A stretch of 37,999 bases of DNA from Octopus bimaculoides (GCF_001194135.2 NC_068983.1:99759011-99797009), one strand, 5' to 3'. Positions 6,564 to 37,344 are shown, counted from the first letter of the stretch. A program made the numbers and translations. The notes: a model not told the origin generated them from the letters alone.

Positions 6564-8400
6564 CATCATCATCATCATTTAACGTCCGCTTTCCATGGTA
6601 GCATGGGTTGGATGATTTGATTGAGGACTGGTGAACCAGATGGCTACACCAGGCTCCAATCTGGTTTGGCAGAGTTTCTACAGCTGGATGCCCTTCCTAA
6701 CGCTAACCACTCCGAGAGTGTAGTGGATGCTTTTATGTGCCACCGGCACAAGGGCCAGTTACGCGGTAATAGTAACAGCCATGCTCAAAATGGTGTATTT
6801 TACATGCCACCTGCACAGGAGCCAGTCCAGCGGCACTGGCAATGATCTCGCTTGAATGACTTTTCATGTGCCACTGGCACAAGTGCCAGGAAGGCGGCGC
6901 TGGGCACAGGTGCCATCACGATTTTGCTTGCCCCAACAGGTCTTCGCAAGCCGAGTTTAGTGTCCAATGAAGGAGATGATGTTGGCATGGGTGCCAGTCG
7001 TTGAATTTAGTTCGATTTCGATTTCACCTGCCTCAACAGGTCTTCGCAAGCGGAATTTAGTGTCCGATGAAGGAAGGTACGCATAAGTGGGCTGGCTACA
7101 CCCCTGGCAGNNNNNNNNNNATTTTACATGCCACCTGCACAGGAGCCAGTCCAGCGGCACTGGCAATGATCTCGCTTGAATGACTTTTCATGTGCCACTG
7201 GCACAAGTGCCAGGAAGGCGGCGCTGGGCACAGGTGCCATCACGATTTTGCTTGCCCCAACAGGTCTTCGCAAGCCGAGTTTAGTGTCCAATGAAGGAGA
7301 TGATGTTGGCATGGGTGCCAGTCGTTGAATTTAGTTCGATTTCGATTTCACCTGCCTCAACAGGTCTTCGCAAGCGGAATTTAGTGTCCGATGAAGGAAG
7401 GTACGCATAAGTGGGCTGGCTACACCCCTGGCAGAGGCCTTAGATTTAGGTCTCACTTGACTTGTCGGGTCTTCTCACGTATAGTATATTTCCAAAGGTC
7501 TCGGTCAGAAGTCATTGCCTCGGTGAGGCCCAATGCTTGAAGGTCGTGCCTCACCACCTCATCCCAGGTCTTCCTGGGCCTACCTCTCCCACAGGTTCCC
7601 TCAACTGCTAGGGTGTGGTACTTTTTCACACAGTTATCCTCATCCATTCTCGCCACATGACCAGACCAGCGCAATTGTCTCTCTTGCACACCACAACTGA
7701 TGCTTCTTAGGTTCAACTTTTCTCTCAAGGTACTTACACTCTGTCTAATATGCACACTGACATTACACATCGATCGGAGCATACTGGCTTCATTTCTTGC
7801 GAGCCTACGCATGTCCTCAGCAGTCACGGTCCATGTTTCACTGCCATGTAGCATGGCTGTTCGTACACATGCGTCATACAGTCTGCCTTTTACTCTGAGT
7901 GAGAGGCCCCTTGTCACCAGCAGAGGTAAGAGCTCTCTGAACTTTGCCCAGGCTTTTCTTATTCTAGCAGCTACACTTTCNNNNNNNNNNNNNNNNNNNN
8001 NNNNNNNNNNNNNNNNNNNNNNNNNNNNNNNNNNNNNNNNNNNNNNNNNNNNNNNNNNNNNNNCTAGATAGCGGAAGCTATCAACTAAGTCTAGTTTTTC
8101 TCCCTGGAATGTGGCCAAAGTTGTTTTCTGTACATTTTCAGTGTTTATTGCTCCTGAACATCTGCCACATACAAAAACTAACTTCCTAGTTAACCTTCCT
8201 TTGATATTGCTGTACCTCTTATGTGTTGATAGCTTGCACTGGGTACATCTTATAGAGTTTCTACCTATGCCTTTTCTACAGATCGAGCAGAGCCATCTAC
8301 CTGAAGGGGTTTGTGTTTTGTCTACCTTCCTACTTATTAGGACTTTGGTTTTAGCTAGGTTGACTCTAAGGCCCTTCGATTCTAGTCCTTCTATTTCTTG
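6564..8400 (-). mobile_element. Young 5'-truncated RTE-clade LINE: open frame 7453-8400 (RT C-terminus, Cys/His finger, RLRWSGHVARM..GRPRKTW), ~0.9 kb 3'UTR, (GAT)n tail
   Basis: Stop-free frame from GLESKGLRVNLAKTKV to EKTRQVK*; RLRW.GHV.RM and GRP..TW are RTE-clade C-terminal hallmarks. Includes gaps 7111-7120 and 7981-8063 and a 314-bp assembly duplication. Confidence 0.95.
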
Positions 8401-9397: not shown

Positions 9398-9793
9398 ATC
9401 TTTTACCTTTTACTTGTTTCAGTCATTAGACTGCGGCCATGCTGGGGCACAGCCTTGAAGAGTTTTAGTCAAACGAATTGATCAAAGTACTTATTTTTTG
9501 TGTAAAGTTTGGTACTTAGCTATTGGTCACTTTTGCCAAACTGCTAAGGTATGGCAACGTAAACACACCAACACCAGTTGTCAAGTGGTGGTGGGGGACA
9601 AACACATACACAAAGACATATATATATATACAGTAGGCTTTTTCCGTTTCTGTCTATCAAATCAACTCACAAGGCTTTGGTCAGTCTGAGGCAATAGTAG
9701 AAGACGTTTGCCCAAGTGTGTCAAACAGTTGGACTGAACCTGGAACCATGTGGTTGGGAAGTAAACTTCTTACTACACAGTCATGCTTGTGCC
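9398..9793 (-). mobile_element. Full-length tRNA-headed, CORE-like SINE with microsatellite hinge and ...GACTGAAACAAGTAAAAG tail
   Basis: A-box-like tgactgtgtagt and B-box-like ggttcagtcc on the minus strand; cttgggcaa CORE-like segment; second copy at 36189-36826. Confidence 0.85.
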
Positions 9794-10074
9794 TGATATT
9801 CTTTTACAGAAAAATAAGTAAATATATTAGAACATATGTTTTAAATGGAGAAAATTACAAGAAAAAGTAACAATATCAATACTCCGCTGCTCAGCACTGT
9901 CAGACCTCACCTACTCCTGCTTACCATTCATTGCTCTCTGGTTCCAAATGATCACTCCCATCCTCTTTTCTAAAGGTACTCTTCAACAGCAAGAAACCTC
10001 TTCTGCTTGGTTCCTTCTCTTCAGCATTTATTCATCTTTTACTCTCATCTCCTAGCATAAAGTTGCCTCTTCAG

Positions 10075-10370: not shown

Positions 10371-10770
10371 GCAGATGTAGCTGTGTGGTTAAAAGTTTGC
10401 TTCCCAACCATATGGTTTTGGACTCAATTCCACTGCATGGGTTAAAATAGATCCAGGTTAACCAAAGCCTTGTGAGTGGATATGAAAGCCTGTTGTGTAT
10501 GTGTGTACATGCACGCACACACACACACACACACAAACAGTTGAGGGGTCTTGCCTTGTGAGTACTTGGCAACATCACTAGTGCTGATGCCACAGAAAAC
10601 AAAGCACCCAACACACTCTGTAAAGTGGTTGGCATTAGGAAGGGCATCCAGCTGTAGAAACCATGTCAAAACAGATATTGGAGCTCAGAATAACCCTCTG
10701 GCTCATTGGTTCTTGTCAAACCATTTAAATAAAGCCAGCAAGAAAAAGGAGGCATCACATGGCAATGATG
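10371..10770 (+). mobile_element. tRNA-headed SINE with (CA)n hinge and RTE-3'UTR-like tail
   Basis: Head gtagctgtgtggttaaaagtttgcttcccaaccatatgg; tail aagcacccaacacactctgtaaagtggttggcattaggaagggcatccagctgtagaaac shared with RTE. Confidence 0.8.
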
Positions 10771-16514: not shown

Positions 16515-16710
16515 GTACAAGCATGGCTATGTGGTCAAGAAGTTTGCATTGCAATCACATGATTTTGAGTTCAATCCCTAGTATGGCACATTGATTGGGC
16601 AAATGCCTTCTATTATAGCACCAGATCAACCAATGCCTTGTGAGAGGAAATTGTAGATGGAAACTGTGTGGAAGTCTGTCGTGTGTGTGTTTGTGTGTGT
16701 GTGTGTATGC
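16515..16710 (+). mobile_element. tRNA/CORE-like SINE head ending in (TG)n
   Basis: catggctatgtggtcaagaagtttgc..gagttcaatccc..gggcaaatg..ccttgtgag..gtagatggaaactg. Confidence 0.8.
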
Positions 16711-19837: not shown

Positions 19838-19999
<162 letters not shown>

Positions 20000-21417: not shown

Positions 21418-22419
21418 AATATAATACAGTGAAAAAGTTTTTTAAGAGCAATGTCAGTAGCTATCTTAGAACATGTTTTGATAGGGTCAATCTACCCACA
21501 TACAAGCATGTTTTTGCCTGTAATAATCTTTATGGGTGAGGCCACTAAGTTTAATGACATCTTTAGAATTGAAAGACCTATAAATATTTTTTGATTTACA
21601 ACTTTATTCTGCTATCCACCCTCATGATTGAGGGTAACCCTGATTAGAAATTTCACTTGTTGATGATCTGTTAGTTAATCAATATGTCATTGCTCACTTG
21701 TTGATTTGGTAAGCCTGATGAGTTGAGAGTTGCATAACATATTACATAATCTTATGGATGTTGTGTATACTGCACATCTGACTGCACCTTGTTACTGCCA
21801 CACTAAATACTCTTAATGAAACAATTGTAAGAGTACCAGATAACCCATTTACCTGCTTGCATTTGGTTTTATGGCATGCTTATGGTTCCATTCACCACTT
21901 GATACTATTGGAGTTGTGGATTACCAAACAATAGGAAACTTCTCTTCATCAACACACTCAGTGCCATGATAATGGATTATATAACTGTCTGACTTGCATC
22001 ATTCTGTCTAGCTAATTATTGTAGCTTGCTTCACTTTGATATGCATCAATTCTTTATGGACCCCATATAATCAATCAATCAAACAAACAAACGGACAGGC
22101 AAACAAATATGCATAGGCCTCCTCTCCTAGCCAGTGAGGTGGCATCATTCAAAAACTAAAACGATGCAAAGTGCATTGTGACAAACAATATATAACAGCA
22201 TCCATACATACACACACACACATATATNNNNNNNNNNNNNNNNNNNNNNNNNNNNNNNNNNNNNNNNNNNNNNNNNNNNNNNNNNNNNNNNNNNNNNNNN
22301 NNNNNNNNNNNNNNNNNNNNNNNNNNNNNNNNNNNNNNNNNNNNNNNNNNNNNNNNNNNNNNNNNNNNNNNNNNNNNNNNNNNNNNNNNNNNNNNNNNNN
22401 NNNNNNNNNNNNNNNNNNN

Positions 22420-22683
22420 ATATATAAAGTAGTTATATACTGCCAACTTAACGTGACAGTCCCAATAAGGGAATATACTACTGCTGTTTAGCCCTAGGAA
22501 GCTGGACCACTTCCTATTAGGCCTTGACACATTTCCTGTGCCCTTATCCTTACGAGGGGGAGACAAACTCCTCCACCCAGCCTAGCCTGGATTCAGGGAC
22601 ATGTTTCTGAGTCTTTGCTCGTCATCAGCCTGAAGTAGCACGACTGGCTAGATGAAGAAGTCTGTTTCACTCTCGTAAGGATA
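22420..22683 (-). mobile_element. Small structured ribozyme-bearing element (retrozyme/Penelope-like, non-autonomous) between (TA)n tracts
   Basis: GC-richer than its flanks; 24-bp inverted repeat 22545-22568/22660-22683; several further hairpins; contains the hammerhead. Confidence 0.55.
22592..22634 (-). ncRNA. Type I hammerhead ribozyme (near-canonical)
   Basis: Minus strand UUCAGG-CUGAUGA-CGAG-CAAAGA-CUCA-GAAA-CAUG-UC-CCUGAA: 6-bp helix I, intact CUGAUGA/GAAA core, GUC site, one C.A mismatch at the base of helix II. Confidence 0.8.
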
Positions 22684-23319
22684 TATATATATATATAATT
22701 CTCAGAATCATAATTTTTTACTCTACTGTTTTAATTTAATTAACCATAACCACGTTCTCAAAGTTGGTATATTCGATGCAGAAAACATTTTCTGCAGTTT
22801 TTGTAATTAACGGTCACAACATTCATGATGATTTGGATAAATACAGTTTCTTTTGACTGATGATAACTATTTAAATAGTGAGAATAGTTTGACTATCCAA
22901 GGGAGTAAGACGTTGAGATCTTGTCTGTGTTAATTTAAATCCTATCAGTGATAATACACTGTAGACAAGAGAGGTCACTAGATATCTCTTGCCTACTTCA
23001 GCAGGTAACAAAGTAGATTAAGCTAAAAATAATGATATAATGTGAAAGCTTTTTGCTATAAAATGACAAAAAAATTTGATGACTTATACTTCCAACAGCA
23101 AGTTCATTTTCACATATACACAACAGAAACTAATTTAAGCAGTGACCTAAATATTTCCATTGACATTAATAGAAGCAATTTATTGTGACATCAGTTCTCA
23201 ATTATTATGTTTCAAGTCTCAAAATCTTATTGCTCTAATAAATGCTTTGGTGAAATTAGTTGTAAATTGCCTTTTTTAAGTCACAAAAAAAAAAACAAAC
23301 AAACAGAAAACAGCCTTTA

Positions 23320-23495
23320 GGCACAGGAGTGGCTGTGTGGTAAGTAGCTTGCTTACCAACCACATGGTTCCAGGTTCATTCCCACTGCATGGCACCTTGG
23401 GCAAGTGTCTCAGGCCGACCAAAGCCTTGTGGGTGGATTTTGTAGATGGAAACTGAAAGAAGCACATCGTATATATGTATATATACACACACACA
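23320..23495 (+). mobile_element. tRNA/CORE-like SINE head running into a gap
   Basis: ggcacaggagtggctgtgtggtaagtagcttgc..ggttcattccc..caccttgggcaagtgtct..gccttgtgggtggattttgtagatggaaactgaaagaagc. Confidence 0.88.
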
Positions 23496-23989
23496 NNNNN
23501 NNNNNNNNNNNNNNNNNNNNNNNNNNNNNNNNNNNNNNNNNNNNNNNNNNNNNNNNNNNNNNNNNNNNNNNNNNNNNNNNNNNNNNNNNNNNNNNNNNNN
23601 NNNNNNNNNNNNNNNNNNNNNNNNNNNNNNNNNNNNNNNNNNNNNNNNNNNNNNNNNNNNNNNNNNNNNNNNNNNNNNNNNNNNNNNNNNNNNNNNNNNN
23701 NNNNNNNNNNNNNNNNNNNNNNNNNNNNNNNNNNNNNNNNNNNNNNNNNNNNNNNNNNNNNNNNNNNNNNNNNNNNNNNNNNNNNNNNNNNNNNNNNNNN
23801 NNNNNNNNNNNNNNNNNNNNNNNNNNNNNNNNNNNNNNNNNNNNNNNNNNNNNNNNNNNNNNNNNNNNNNNNNNNNNNNNNNNNNNNNNNNNNNNNNNNN
23901 NNNNNNNNNNNNNNNNNNNNNNNNNNNNNNNNNNNNNNNNNNNNNNNNNNNNNNNNNNNNNNNNNNNNNNNNNNNNNNNNNNNTAATAA

Positions 23990-24518: not shown

Positions 24519-24584
24519 AGAAGGAAGGACTCGAATTTTGCATGTCACCGGTATAGATAAGTTGTTAACAAGTGTGGTTAAAAT
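24519..24584 (-). CDS. DUS2: DUS2 exon: ILTTLVNNLSIPVTCKIRVLPS
   Basis: Acceptor cttctttcag, donor gtaagt, 66 nt; PVTCKIR motif. Confidence 0.96.
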
Positions 24585-30570: not shown

Positions 30571-30910
30571 GAGTGGTACAACAATGCACCGATGTTTACT
30601 GGAAATAGCAGTTGATAATATATGATGCTATAGTAACGCTTCACTGTATATATATACTGGCAAAGATGTTTGTAGGCGGCAAACAAAAAATTTCATCTTA
30701 CCTGTAGGAAGAACATTAAATAAATGTACAACCCAGATGTGGATAATCTAGGATCTAGATTTTGAACTTTCCAAATTACGCTTGTTAACGTAAAATTGAT
30801 CAGTTCTCCTCCGCTAGATTCACCTAGACAAAATTTCGAATGTTGCTACATCAGTGCCAGTATACTTATCTGAACGCTTGCCCGTTAACAGACCGAGAAC
30901 ACTGAAAAAA

Positions 30911-31080
30911 CCTTGTGAGTGGATTTGGTAGATGGAAACTAAAAGAAACCCATCAGTATATTTATAGGCATATACACATGTGAATGTAAATACATGAGTG
31001 TGTGTTTGTGTTTGCTTGTCTTGACATCACATGGTAGTTGTAATTGAGAGTCACTGTCATGCAAGCAGGGTCATTCATTA
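30911..31080 (+). mobile_element. Partial SINE (post-CORE segment plus start of tail)
   Basis: ccttgtgagtggatttggtagatggaaactaaaagaaaccc..cttgtcttgacatc..gtcactgtcatgcaagc. Confidence 0.75.
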
Positions 31081-31794: not shown

Positions 31795-32050
31795 GTATAT
31801 GTAGCATCAAATATAGTGTGCAAGAGAGAAGACTGCACTGGTATGGCCATGTAATGCATGAATGAGGACAGTTGCATCAATAGGTGTTGGTCGCTAAATC
31901 TAGAGGAAACATATAGAAGGGATAGACCCATGAAGACATGAGATGAAGTGGTGAGAATGAATCTATAAACATTAGAACTCACAGAAAGGATGACAGGGGA
32001 CTGAGACGCCTGGAGGTTTGCTGTGCTTGAAAAGACACATCAAGCTAAGT
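31795..32050 (+). mobile_element. Old RTE C-terminal fragment
   Basis: gtgcaagagagaagactgcactggtatggccatgt (VQERRLHWYGHV). Confidence 0.8.
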
Positions 32051-32117
32051 ATGGTTGCCCTTGCATACAAGCTCATCCATTGCAGCCCTCCAGCTGAGCA
32101 TTCCTAATCTTGCATCC

Positions 32118-33006
32118 GTTGGATGTGTAATGTCAATGTGAATACCCGTCAGAGTGTAAGTATCTTGAGAGAAAAGCTGAACATTAGAAGCATCAGTTGT
32201 GGCGTGCAAGAGAGACGATTGCGCTGGTATGGACATGTGGTGAGAATGGAGGAGGATAGCTGCGTGAAAAAGTGCCACACCCTAACAGTTGAGGGAACCC
32301 GTGGAAGAGGTAGGCCCAGGAAGACCTGGGCTGAGGTGGTGAGGCAAGACCTTCGTACATTGGGCCTCACCGAGGCGATGACTACTGACCGAGACCTTTG
32401 NNNNNNNNNNNNNNNNNNNNNNNNNNNNNNNNNNNNNNNNNNNNNNNNNNNNNNNNNNNNNNNNNNNNNNNNNNNNNNNNNNNNNNNNNNNNNNNNNNNN
32501 NNNNNNNNNNNNNNNNNNNNNNNNNNNNNNNNNNNNNNNNNNNNNNNNNNNNNNNNNNNNNNNNNNNNNNNNNNNNNNNNNNNNNNNNNNNNNNNNNNNN
32601 NNNNNNNNNNNNNNNNNNNNNNNNNNNNNNNNNNNNNNNNNNNNNNNNNNNNNNNNNNNNNNNNNNNNNNNNNNNNNNNNNNNNNNNNNNNNNNNNNNNN
32701 NNNNNNNNNNNNNNNNNNNNNNNNNNNNNNNNNNNNNNNNNNNNNNNNNNNNNNNNNNNNNNNNNNNNNNNCATAAAAGACACCATTTCGAGCGTGGCCA
32801 TTTTCGTGCGGGTGACACGTAAAAGCACCCACTACACTCTCTGAGTGGTTGGCGTTAGGAAGGGCATCCAGCTGTAGAAACTCTGCCAAATCAGACTGGA
32901 GCCTGGTGTTGCCATCCGGTTTCACCAGTCCTCAGTCAAATCGTCCAACCCATGCTAGCATGGAAAGCGGACGTTAAACGATGATGATGATGATGATGAT
33001 GATGAT
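32118..33006 (+). mobile_element. Young 5'-truncated RTE LINE (internal gap 32401-32771)
   Basis: ORF 32123: VQERRLRWYGHVVRMEEDSCVKKCHTLTVEGTRGRGRPRKTW; 3'UTR end and (GAT)n tail. Confidence 0.95.
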
Positions 33007-33354: not shown

Positions 33355-33655
33355 TGGCACAAGCATGGCTGTGTGGTTAAGGAGTTTGCTTCCCAGCCAT
33401 ATGGTTTCAAGTTCAGTCCCACTGTAATGTACTTTGAACAAGTGACTTCAATTATCACCCTAGGTTGATCAAAGCTTTGTGAATGGATTTGGTAGAAGGA
33501 AAGTGAAAGAAACCTACTGTCTATATAGATATAGATAACAGGCTTCTTTATAACCATGTACGTGTATGTGTGCACGTGTGAGTTTGTGTGTCTCCTTGTC
33601 TTGACATCATGCGATAGTTGTAAACTAGCTTCACTGTCATGCAAGTGATGCAATT
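33355..33655 (+). mobile_element. tRNA/CORE-like SINE, 5' part (tail resumes at 34346-34460)
   Basis: ggcacaagcatggctgtgtggttaaggagtttgcttccc..agttcagtccc..; tail cttgtcttgacatc. Confidence 0.82.
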
Positions 33656-36188: not shown

Positions 36189-36826
36189 CTTTTACTTGTT
36201 TCAGTCATTTGACAGCGGCCATACTGGGGCACTGCCTTGAAGGGCTTTTTAGTCAAACGAATCAACCCAAGGACTTATTTTTTAAAGCCTAGTGCTTATT
36301 CTATTGATCCCTTTGGTTGAACCACTAGATTACGGGGATGTAAACACACCAACGCCAGTTGTCAAGCGGTGGTGGGCACAGACAGACACAAAGACACACA
36401 GACACAGACATGGAAATCTAACCTGTCATTGTGGTTTTGTGGCACAAAGCAAAGTAGGCCTAGCCTTCCATTCGAGAAAACATAGTAAATGATTCACAAG
36501 CACTCAAGTAAACTGAATCCTCCACTTGTTCCATTTGCCAAAAGGTTTGCAAGGCACCAGCAGGCCTCAAGAGACACATTTGTGTCCATAGAACATGATT
36601 AACGCTTTTATTTTATTGAACCCTCATTTGTTGTTCACAACAAGAGAGTTCACCATATATATATATATGATGGGCTTCTTTCAGTTTCCATTAACCAAAT
36701 TCACTCACAAGGCTTTGGTTGGTCTGAGGCTGTAGTAGAAGACACTTGCTCAAGGTACCCTGCAGTGTGACTGAACCTGGAACCATGTGGTCCAGAAGCA
36801 AGCTTCTTACCACACAGCTATGCCTG
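36189..36826 (-). mobile_element. tRNA/CORE-like SINE (family of 9398-9793) split by ~240 bp of foreign sequence
   Basis: Tail 36189-36410 and head 36655-36826 are both collinear with 9398-9793. Confidence 0.85.
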
Positions 36827-37344
36827 TTTTTTATTTTTATTTTATTTTATTACAATTTTGGCTTTATATATTTTTAATACCATCTTTGCAAGTTTGTTGT
36901 GAATATATCTTTCATTGATAAATAGATTTATATGTTTTTTTTTAGAAAAATGTCATTATAAAAAGATGAGACACTGTTCATTGTCCTTAAAATGATATAA
37001 TATGATGATGGTATTGTACTATTTTAGCTGTGGTGGTCCAGGTGGCTAGTATATGAAAAGCAGGACTGTAGACCAACAATCCTTGAATCTCTGAATTGAA
37101 GCAGTTATCAGAGGGAATTGAGGTCAGTTAGTGGGTAATGAAAGCAGTGGGAAGGTGGATGAAAACTATAAAGAAAAGGTGGGTGGTATGAAAAAAGGAT
37201 AGCAAGAAGGGTAGGAGCAATACGTACATTATGAAACTTCACTGATCTTATGTGTTAGTCACTTCATATTAATGCTTACTAGACTTTGAGGCTTACTAGA
37301 CTTGAGTTGTCACAACAGTATAAGGCTAATATTTTAGCTAAATT

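What the first reader, a model, noticed from the sequence alone, without database searches (positions are those of the whole stretch)
22592..22634. Type I hammerhead ribozyme on the sense strand of a DUS2 intron
Seen (minus strand): helix I UUCAGG/CCUGAA, core CUGAUGA, helix II CGAG/CUCA with loop CAAAGA, GAAA, short self-complementary helix III (CAUG) and a GUC cleavage triplet. The predicted cut is between 22598 and 22597. Helix I continues past an asymmetric internal loop (AGUCGUGCUAC / UCCA) into CUAGCC/GGCUAG. Known: this matches the architecture of the Schistosoma mansoni type I hammerhead (loop II CAAAUA docking onto a helix I bulge). Short palindromic helix III is typical of Penelope-associated and retrozyme hammerheads, which often cleave as dimers. 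The only core defect is a C.A mismatch at 10.1-11.1. Inference: a self-cleaving motif is transcribed within DUS2 pre-mRNA, in the intron between the 24519 and 19996 exons, and could affect co-transcriptional processing. This copy may be attenuated.
Basis: partly seen in the sequence, partly recalled or inferred. Interest (0 to 1): 0.85.

Follow-up and report, generated by a model that had tools for sequence, protein, structure and literature searches.

The report
Decayed hammerhead ribozyme relic in intron
A real but slightly damaged, solitary hammerhead self-cleaving RNA motif sits inside a small mobile-element-like insertion in an intron of a mollusc-like DUS2 gene; this is a common, already described situation in animal genomes and probably has little or no effect on the gene.

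Summary
On the minus strand, 22634→22592 carries a type I hammerhead: helix I of 6 bp, CUGAUGA, helix II CGAG/CUCA with a C·A at 10.1/11.1, loop CAAAGA, GAAA, A-U plus a CAUG tetraloop, and GUC with the cut at 22598|22597. A descriptor finds it once in the window and 0 times in 2000 shuffles. Rfam HH9 aligns over its full length at 23.7 bits, below the gathering score of 52. It lies sense-strand in the DUS2 intron between exons ending at 24519 and starting at 19996.

It is the apex of a 135-nt hairpin within a 255-nt, 47.5% GC block bounded by (TA)n in AT-rich intron. That fits a solitary copy of a hammerhead-bearing retroelement (non-LTR retrozyme or PLE-related). Two features predict weak or no self-cleavage: helix III needs a partner copy and none is nearby, and the most conserved helix pair is mismatched. 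No hammerhead occurs in three bivalve DUS2 genes. No same-species copies could be obtained, so family consensus and covariation are untested.

Verdict: a new member of a known kind, low interest.

The parts
22592..22634 (-). Type I hammerhead motif proper, from the helix I 5' strand to the helix I 3' strand. Predicted cleavage is after C17 (22598), between 22598 and 22597.
   Evidence: Sequence read; exact coordinates; only descriptor hit in the window, 0 of 2000 shuffles; Rfam HH9 23.7 bits
22622..22628 (-). Core strand C3-A9, CUGAUGA
   Evidence: aligned to the HH9 consensus CUGAUGA
22608..22621 (-). Helix II CGAG / CUCA with 6-nt loop CAAAGA. C10.1 (22621) is opposite A11.1 (22608), a mismatch, so only 3 Watson-Crick pairs remain.
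   Evidence: the loop aligns to the HH9 loop CAAAAA; a single transition (A11.1G or C10.1U) restores the pair
22598..22607 (-). G12 A13 A14, A15.1, palindromic tetraloop CAUG, U16.1, C17 (GAAACAUGUC). Helix III is 1 bp as a monomer. ACAUGU can form a 6-bp intermolecular helix III with a second copy.
   Evidence: cofold of two copies -49.2 versus 2 x -18.2 kcal/mol, isolated segment duplex -6.0 kcal/mol; architecture as defined in PMC4209133
22635..22651 (-). 5' side of the helix I extension: outer helix CUAGCC (22651-22646) and internal loop AGUCGUGCUAC (22645-22635), containing the 'UAC' that aligns with the HH9 / Schistosoma-type loop 1
22582..22591 (-). 3' side of the helix I extension: internal loop UCCA (22591-22588) and outer helix GGCUAG (22587-22582)
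22547..22681 (-). 135-nt long hairpin (UCCUUACGAG...CUCGUAAGGA) with the hammerhead at its apex. Both ends are flanked by TA.
   Evidence: MFE -66.2 kcal/mol, z = -5.99 against 200 shuffles; minus strand -65.7 versus plus strand -56.0 kcal/mol; 6 G.U versus 2 A.C among the arm transitions; coordinates
22427..22681 (-). 255-nt GC-normal block (47.5% GC) that looks like an inserted element: the hairpin plus a 3' part with smaller hairpins. Its 3' limit is uncertain because an assembly gap follows.
   Evidence: GC 0.475 against 0.29 and 0.37 in the flanks; fold; no other copy in the window
22682..22697 (.). (TA)n microsatellite directly upstream (in the minus-strand sense) of the block
   Evidence: TRF reports 22681-22697, period 2, 8.5 copies; sequence
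22228..22426 (.). TATATAT (22426-22420), then a 192-N assembly gap (22419-22228), after which ATATATGTGTGT... resumes. This is the second (TA)n boundary, and it hides whatever follows the block.
24519..24584 (-). Upstream DUS2 exon (ILTTLVNNLSIPVTCKIRVLPS); donor GT at 24518-24517
19839..19996 (-). Downstream DUS2 exon ([33 protein letters not shown]...IPVIA); acceptor AG at 19998-19997

Best explanation
The motif is a genuine hammerhead by descent. It is a canonical metazoan type I hammerhead: helix I of 6 bp, a helix I internal loop with UAC, helix II with loop CAAAGA, and helix III reduced to A-U plus the palindromic tetraloop CAUG.

It sits at the apex of a 135-nt hairpin inside a roughly 255-nt GC-normal block. 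That block was inserted into a (TA)n microsatellite within a 4.5-kb intron of a DUS2 orthologue, in the same orientation as the gene. The block is most likely a solitary (monomer) copy of a hammerhead-bearing non-autonomous retroelement of the non-LTR retrozyme / Penelope-like-element-associated kind.

In the parent family the ribozyme would process multimeric element transcripts, with two adjacent copies pairing through ACAUGU to build a stable helix III. This copy is transcribed only passively within DUS2 pre-mRNA. Two things predict slow or absent self-cleavage: no second copy is nearby to form the dimer, and the 10.1-11.1 pair is a C.A mismatch. That mismatch is reachable from C-G by a CpG-to-CpA transition in a strongly CpG-depleted genome. 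So it is probably a neutral relic rather than a regulator of DUS2.

Shown: the motif, its significance, the hairpin, the block and its (TA)n borders, and the intron and strand. Inferred: the retroelement origin, the mode of insertion, the attenuation, and neutrality.
For: - Motif present and non-random; 1 descriptor hit against 0 in 2000 shuffles; full-length HH9 alignment at 23.7 bits with core, UAC, CAAA.A and GUC aligned.
- The architecture matches the published definition of canonical metazoan type I hammerheads: helix I 6 bp, helix II 4 bp, helix III 1-2 bp with a 2-4 nt palindromic loop, acting as dimers (PMC4209133).
- Such hammerheads reside in 150-450-bp repeats of <50% GC whose RNAs are highly self-paired, with about 5000 copies in a mussel (PMC7229834). 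Here the block is 255 nt at 47.5% GC and the hairpin z-score is -6.
- (TA)n on both sides. Penelope-like elements insert into microsatellites, with (TA)n a preferred target (PMC8557442). Retrozymes are PLE-derived (bioRxiv 10.64898/2026.07.22.740005).
- Monomer copies are dispersed and about 43% of copies are intronic in Xenopus.
- Single copy in the window.
- Window CpG o/e 0.29 with TpG/CpA excess.
- The dimer is feasible and the pair is repairable by one transition.
- No hammerhead in three bivalve DUS2 loci, with descriptor controls of 95/120 positive and 0/51 negative.
Against: - No second copy of the block or of this hammerhead could be obtained from any source. Repeat-family status, the consensus at 10.1/11.1 and covariation are therefore untested.
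- The defining tandem arrangement of retrozymes is not seen, although a 192-N gap follows the block.
- No PLE reverse-transcriptase or GIY-YIG ORF was recognised nearby.
- The hammerhead is internal to the block, not split at its ends as a cDNA of a cleaved monomer would be.
- Natural families with a mismatch at the base of helix II (U.U in axolotl HHR_Amex2) still cleave (PMC7229834), so inactivity is not proven.
- The Rfam score is below the gathering threshold.
Confidence: 0.68

Rival explanations
1. Domesticated intronic ribozyme. Like HH9 in RECK or HH10 in C10orf118 of amniotes, this hammerhead is maintained by selection in the DUS2 intron. It cleaves the pre-mRNA, perhaps in trans-dimer form or with protein help, to modulate splicing or transcript yield.
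For: Sense orientation inside an intron of a conserved housekeeping gene. Its best Rfam match is the intronic HH9 family, and the loop 1 / loop 2 nucleotides are retained. Amniote intronic hammerheads are thought to derive from retroelement hammerheads (PMC6155905).
Against: Sense orientation is a 50% prior. The most conserved helix pair is mismatched. Helix III is 1 bp with no partner copy. The insertion-like block has (TA)n borders. There is no hammerhead in the DUS2 genes of three bivalves, although these are distant relatives. Retrozyme copies are depleted in introns relative to intergenic DNA but still very common there.
Confidence: 0.07
2. The vehicle is a DNA transposon of the MITE type: a 135-bp palindromic element with 10-12-bp perfect terminal inverted repeats (TCCTTACGAG / CTCGTAAGGA) and a TA target-site duplication (Tc1/mariner-Stowaway style). 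It happens to carry, or has captured, a hammerhead at its centre.
For: TA | TCCTTACGAG ... CTCGTAAGGA | TA arrangement; the termini are perfect while the interior arms are about 75% matched.
Against: The 5' TA is part of a (TA)8 tract, so it carries no information. The GC-normal block continues about 120 nt beyond the hairpin to a second (TA)n. Arm differences favour RNA pairing on the minus strand, at 6 G.U against 2 A.C and -65.7 against -56.0 kcal/mol, though this is not significant (binomial p about 0.14, my arithmetic). No other copy is in the window. I found no described hammerhead-bearing MITE in the papers read.
Confidence: 0.12
3. Chance resemblance: an ordinary intronic palindrome whose apex happens to spell a hammerhead core.
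For: Rfam score below gathering. One mismatch next to the core. The first-stage reader presumably screened many windows.
Against: 0 of 2000 shuffles give even the bare descriptor. Beyond the descriptor, the loop II CAAA.A and the UAC 6 bp from the core match the HH9 consensus. The 51 chance matches to CUGAUGA-N-GAAACAUGUC in viral contigs have essentially no helix I: 31 have 0 pairs and the maximum is 4.
Confidence: 0.03
4. The relevant feature is the long hairpin rather than the ribozyme: an intronic hairpin processed into small RNAs (a miRNA- or endo-siRNA-like precursor derived from a repeat).
For: 135-nt near-perfect hairpin, z = -6. Weak mir-878 model match at 17.5 bits, E 0.61.
Against: The mir-878 match is far below its gathering score of 80 and reflects only hairpin shape. 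The apex carries a complete hammerhead core, which this reading does not explain. No small-RNA data are available.
Confidence: 0.05

Closest known systems
Hammerhead_HH9 (Rfam RF02275), the intronic hammerhead of the RECK gene in birds and mammals
   Same: Type I topology. 6-bp helix I followed by an internal loop with UAC and a distal helix. CUGAUGA, 4-position helix II with a CAAA.A loop, GAAAC, GUC site. Intronic, on the sense strand (PMC6155905).
   Different: HH9 has a stable helix III (3 bp plus a 5-nt loop in the model) and a G-C pair at 10.1-11.1. It is ultraconserved at an orthologous position. Here helix III is 1 bp, 10.1-11.1 is C.A, the score is 23.7 against a gathering score of 52, and no orthologous conservation was found.
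Canonical type I hammerheads of animal non-LTR retrozymes and satellite-like repeats (Schistosoma Sm-alpha, newt/axolotl satellite 2 / HHR_Amex1, coral and mussel retrozymes)
   Same: [quoted passage not shown] The host repeat is 150-450 bp, <50% GC and highly self-paired (PMC4209133; PMC7229834).
   Different: Those occur as tandem arrays or in thousands of copies and are expressed as circRNAs. Here only one copy is visible, with no tandem partner, the hammerhead is internal to a long hairpin, and copy number and expression are unknown.
Minimal hammerheads of Penelope-like elements (PLE pLTRs)
   Same: The same GAAA-CAUG-UC helix III solution and reliance on dimers. PLEs prefer microsatellite targets, including (TA)n.
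   Different: PLE min-HHRs have helix I of 4-5 bp without conserved loops, helix II of 5-8 bp, and an unpaired nucleotide after A9: U in 133 of the 139 metagenome examples. The window motif has the canonical 14-nt helix II plus loop and the UAC loop, and no PLE ORF is adjacent.
Axolotl HHR_Amex2
   Same: A natural family with a mismatch (U.U) at the base of helix II that still self-cleaves, weakly as a monomer and better as a dimer (PMC7229834).
   Different: U.U is reported as the best-tolerated mispair (PMC3088659). Here the mispair is C.A, and it is seen in a single copy, not shown to be the family state.

Membership tests
Hammerhead ribozyme (any type) | Conserved core C3 U4 G5 A6 N7 G8 A9 / G12 A13 A14 / A15.1-U16.1 / H17 | tested here: met
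   CUGAUGA 22628-22622, GAAA 22607-22604, U16.1 22599, C17 22598; the core list is as in PMC3088659
Hammerhead ribozyme (any type) | Base pairs directly adjacent to the core are formed (1.1-2.1, 10.1-11.1, 15.1-16.1) | tested here: not met
   G2.1-C1.1 and A15.1-U16.1 are formed, but C10.1 (22621) opposite A11.1 (22608) is a mismatch. Perreault et al. rejected such candidates.
Hammerhead ribozyme (any type) | Score at or above the Rfam gathering threshold for a hammerhead family | tested here: not met
   No hit at gathering; HH9 23.7 bits against 52. Calibration: 0 of 20 loci with genuine short-helix-III hammerheads reach gathering either, so this criterion is weak for this architecture.
Hammerhead ribozyme (any type) | Site-specific self-cleavage giving 2',3'-cyclic phosphate and 5'-OH ends | not testable with these tools
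   Needs in vitro transcription or end mapping
Canonical metazoan type I hammerhead (Cervera & de la Pena 2014) | Type I topology with helix I of about 6 bp | tested here: met
   UUCAGG / CCUGAA, 6 bp, open-ended helix I
Canonical metazoan type I hammerhead (Cervera & de la Pena 2014) | Helix II of about 4 bp, with loop 2 / loop 1 nucleotides for the tertiary contact | tested here: inconclusive
   4 positions but only 3 pairs. The loop CAAAGA and the 5' UAC align with the HH9 consensus; the 3' side is UCC instead of UAC. Tertiary docking cannot be tested here.
Canonical metazoan type I hammerhead (Cervera & de la Pena 2014) | Helix III of 1-2 bp capped by a 2-4-nt palindromic loop (dimer-competent) | tested here: met
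   A15.1-U16.1 plus CAUG; the ACAUGU self-duplex and the cofold favour a dimer
Non-LTR retrozyme | Head-to-tail tandem repeats (>=2 units of 150-450 bp), each with a hammerhead | tested here: not met
   Single copy in 38 kb. A 192-N gap starts right after the block, so a second unit cannot be fully excluded. Monomer derivatives are described.
Non-LTR retrozyme | Unit size 150-450 bp, GC <50%, highly self-paired RNA | tested here: met
   About 255 nt, GC 0.475; MFE z = -6 for the hairpin, -108 kcal/mol for 271 nt
Non-LTR retrozyme | Multi-copy family in the genome; circRNA expression | not testable with these tools
   Source-genome DNA could not be reached; no transcript data
PLE minimal hammerhead | Helix II of 5-8 bp with an unpaired nucleotide at its 5' end, short helix I without conserved loops, location in a pLTR next to an RT / GIY-YIG ORF | tested here: not met
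   Architecture differs from the 139 metagenome examples. No RT/EN ORF within the block's neighbourhood in the ORF list. The LINE-like fragments elsewhere gave no Pfam hit.
Conserved (domesticated) intronic hammerhead, HH9/HH10-like | Presence at the orthologous intron across distant species | tested here: not met
   No hammerhead in the DUS2 loci of Saccostrea, Dreissena or Solemya (L172-L174). Only distant relatives were available, so this test is weak.
MITE (Tc1/mariner-type) | Terminal inverted repeats flanked by a TA duplication; many copies | tested here: inconclusive
   TA|TCCTTACGAG...CTCGTAAGGA|TA is present, but it lies inside or next to (TA)n, and the block extends beyond the hairpin. 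Copy number is not testable.

The most novel reading that the evidence does not exclude
The hammerhead is kept in the DUS2 intron, or more generally this hairpin-embedded form is a distinct family in which a canonical hammerhead sits at the tip of a roughly 40-bp extended helix I. It would act on the host pre-mRNA, for example through conditional, dimer- or protein-dependent cleavage that tunes expression of a tRNA-modification enzyme. That would make it an invertebrate counterpart of the amniote HH9/HH10 intronic ribozymes.
Probability: 0.06. Interest if true: 0.7.

Novelty: new member of a known kind. Interest (0 to 1): 0.22.

Why it matters
As it stands, this adds one more example to a well-described phenomenon: canonical type I hammerheads scattered through animal genomes on small retroelements, many of them in introns. 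It is useful mainly as an annotation point: this intron carries a hammerhead-bearing repeat copy, and Rfam at gathering score does not flag it. It is also a reminder that hammerheads with a 1-bp helix III escape standard Rfam thresholds.

It would matter more only if the source genome showed that this hairpin-embedded form is a family of its own, or if closely related species conserved it at this intron. Either would give an invertebrate test case for the unresolved question of what intronic hammerheads do.

Tried and rejected
1. Rfam at gathering score on the whole window and at E<=10 on 451 nt gave no hammerhead. Only an 86-nt scan, where the filters are laxest, recovered HH9.
2. Self-BLAST of 22400-22850 against the window found no second copy, only the hairpin's own inverted match and (TA)n.
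3. Specific hammerhead patterns in viral and metagenome contigs gave 0 hits.
4. The general pattern CTGATGAN{10,20}GAAACATGTC gave 120+ metagenome loci, but all were of the PLE minimal type and none was canonical or similar to the block. The 51 viral hits lack helix I and served as a chance control.
5. A junk-ORF trick, searching peptides translated across the element against 5.8 billion proteins, gave no hit.
6. A single-exon peptide search found no candidates because the query was too short for the word index.
7. Exact look-ups of two window ORFs to reach the source genome found nothing on record.
8. The source species could not be identified. The best DUS2 orthologues are molluscs at 65-73% identity. 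A cephalopod origin is my guess from the repeat content and is not shown.
9. Pfam on the LINE-like fragments gave no hit.
10. The mir-878 match (17.5 bits) was rejected as a hairpin-shape artefact.
11. The EMBO Reports 2010 intronic-hammerhead paper was not available. I used the 2017 review and Perreault 2011 instead.
12. For the isolated 70-nt domain, the MFE (-18.2) is an alternative fold and the active secondary structure is -11.6 kcal/mol. In the 161-nt context the MFE keeps helices I and II. I draw no conclusion from this, because tertiary contacts are not modelled.

Full report
**Observation**

- outer helix CUAGCC (22651-22646) / GGCUAG (22587-22582)
- asymmetric internal loop AGUCGUGCUAC (22645-22635) / UCCA (22591-22588)
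- helix I UUCAGG (22634-22629) / CCUGAA (22597-22592)
- CUGAUGA (22628-22622)
- helix II CGAG (22621-22618) / CUCA (22611-22608), with C10.1 opposite A11.1
- loop II CAAAGA (22617-22612)
- GAAA (22607-22604)
- CAUG (22603-22600), U16.1 (22599), C17 (22598)
- predicted cut between 22598 and 22597

**Is it more than chance?**

My explicit descriptor requires CUGANGA, helix II of at least 3 bp, GAAA, a short helix III, U-H, and helix I of at least 5 bp. It finds this one site on both strands of the window and none in 2000 dinucleotide-preserving shuffles. A much looser version averages 0.011 hits per shuffle.

Rfam gives nothing at gathering score and nothing on a 451-nt scan at E<=10. On an 86-nt scan, where the filters are laxest, Hammerhead_HH9 (RF02275) aligns across its whole model at 23.7 bits. 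That is E 2.6e-4 for that small search, against a gathering score of 52. The aligned features are CUGAUGA, the CAAA.A loop II, GAAAC, the GUC site and the 'UAC' in the helix I internal loop. The only large difference is a 5-nt deletion in helix III.

Failing the Rfam threshold is not informative for this architecture. Twenty metagenome loci that carry clear short-helix-III hammerheads also give zero Rfam hits at gathering score.

**Gene context**

A collinear series of DUS2-like exons lies on the minus strand from 37852 down to 8456 (the probe was recalled from memory and served only to locate exons). The 203-aa concatenate of the exon peptides matches human DUS2 crystal structures at E 3.4e-72. 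Its best named orthologues are molluscan: Saccostrea 72%, Solemya 73%, Dreissena 65%.

The exon upstream of the motif ends at 24519 with donor GT at 24518-17. The next exon starts at 19996 after AG at 19998-97. The source species could not be identified.

**What surrounds the motif**

The hammerhead is the apex of a 135-nt hairpin, 22681-22547, UCCUUACGAG...CUCGUAAGGA. Its MFE is -66.2 kcal/mol with z = -5.99.

The hairpin is more stable as minus-strand RNA (-65.7) than as its complement (-56.0 kcal/mol). Of the eight transition differences between the arms, six give G.U on the minus strand and two give A.C. This leans toward an RNA-level structure on the hammerhead strand, but it is not significant on its own.

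The hairpin is the 5' half of a 255-nt block (22681-22427) with 47.5% GC. The adjacent intron is 29% and 37% GC. The block is bounded by (TA)8 on one side (22682-22697). On the other side is TATATAT, followed by a 192-N assembly gap and then ATATATGTGT. There is no other copy of the block or the motif in the 38-kb window.

**Comparison with the literature**

Cervera and de la Pena define the 'canonical' metazoan type I hammerhead as follows: helix I of 6 bp, helix II of 4 bp, interacting loops, and a helix III of 1-2 bp capped by a 2-4-nt palindromic loop. That helix III is too unstable to act alone and is completed by pairing with a second copy (PMC4209133). The motif here fits this description.

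Such hammerheads live in 150-450-bp, <50% GC repeats called non-LTR retrozymes. Their RNAs are highly self-paired and often circular. A mussel genome has about 5000 copies (PMC7229834).

Retrozymes appear to be non-autonomous derivatives of Penelope-like elements. In Xenopus, monomer copies are dispersed along the chromosomes and are interpreted as immobile offspring. About 43% of copies lie in introns (bioRxiv 10.64898/2026.07.22.740005). Penelope-like elements insert preferentially into microsatellites, with (TA)n a preferred target (PMC8557442). That matches the (TA)n borders of this block.

The general pattern CUGAUGA-N10-20-GAAACAUGUC retrieved more than 120 metagenome loci with real hammerheads of the other class, the 'minimal' PLE type. 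These have helix I of 4-6 bp, and 133 of 139 have an unpaired U after A9. None is canonical and none resembles the block. The 51 viral matches have essentially no helix I and serve as a chance control.

**Catalytic competence**

All core nucleotides are present. However, Perreault et al. describe the 10.1-11.1 pair as the most conserved pair after 15.1-16.1. [quoted passage not shown] They also report U.U as the best-tolerated mispair (PMC3088659). Here the mispair is C.A.

One transition would restore a pair: A11.1 to G gives C-G, and C10.1 to U gives U-A. The window is strongly CpG-depleted, with o/e 0.29 and TpG+CpA o/e 1.31. Decay of an ancestral CUCG to CUCA is therefore a plausible route; this is inference.

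Helix III is a single A-U pair with a CAUG loop. Two copies can form a 6-bp ACAUGU helix, with a cofold of -49.2 against 2 x -18.2 kcal/mol, but no second copy is nearby.

A natural family with a U.U at the base of helix II still cleaves, weakly as a monomer and better as a dimer. Residual activity therefore cannot be excluded.

**Test of the 'domesticated intronic ribozyme' reading**

The DUS2 loci of three bivalves (L172-L174) contain no hammerhead by a descriptor that recovers 95 of 120 positive-control loci and 0 of 51 negative-control loci. These are distant relatives, so the test is weak. It gives no support for conservation.

**What could not be done**

I could not obtain any DNA from the source species beyond the window. 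Copy number, family consensus, covariation and the insertion boundaries at other sites therefore remain untested. These are the decisive analyses.

**Conclusion**

The most likely explanation is a solitary, slightly decayed copy of a hammerhead-bearing retroelement that landed in a (TA)n tract of a DUS2 intron. It is transcribed passively and is probably neutral. This is a new member of a well-known kind, of low interest unless a genome census or comparison with sister species shows otherwise.

Noticed in passing
window 23300-23460 (-), 36677-36827, 9641-9794, 33356-33510, 10377-10481, 16524-16666, 30907-30946: A SINE-like interspersed repeat of about 150 nt occurs at least 7 times in the window at 68-90% identity. 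Its translations recur in the ORF list. ARAGORN finds no tRNA gene in the window.
   Followed up: partly
window 7453-7900 (-), 1053-1497, 32115-32400, plus weaker pieces at 2864-2982 and 31803-31955: Fragments of a LINE-like retroelement (ORF ending ...GRGRPRKTWDEVVRHDLQALGL...) are present in three main copies at 82-89% identity. Pfam gave no hit for the C-terminal ORF pieces. Copies are listed.
   Followed up: partly
window 6800-6988 and 7124-7312 (-): Two identical 62-aa ORFs lie 324 bp apart, indicating a local tandem duplication next to the LINE-like fragment.
   Followed up: no
window 7820 and 1418 (-): Two further CUGAGGA...GAAA strings lie inside the LINE-like copies. They have no helix I and no U-H site and are not hammerheads.
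   Followed up: yes
window 22228-22419, 23496-23983 and many others: Numerous N gaps, often next to microsatellites ((TA)n, (GT)n, (CA)n), show a short-read scaffold assembly. The gap right after the hammerhead block hides its 3' end.
   Followed up: partly
window-wide: Strong CpG depletion (o/e 0.29) with TpG+CpA excess (1.31), in introns and exons alike, suggests germline DNA methylation over this gene body.
   Followed up: no
L001-L120 (e.g. L009, L020, L021, L038, L054, L062, L063, L070, L072): Metagenome contigs from a few projects carry PLE-type minimal hammerheads (CUGAUGA-U-helix II-GAAACAUGUC). These are often two copies on opposite strands 100-400 bp apart, and are presumably host (eukaryotic) DNA in host-associated metagenomes. 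Rfam at gathering score detects none of the 20 loci tested.
   Followed up: partly
L174 11574 (+): One weak descriptor hit (4-bp helix I including G.U) in the Solemya DUS2 locus, judged to be chance.
   Followed up: no
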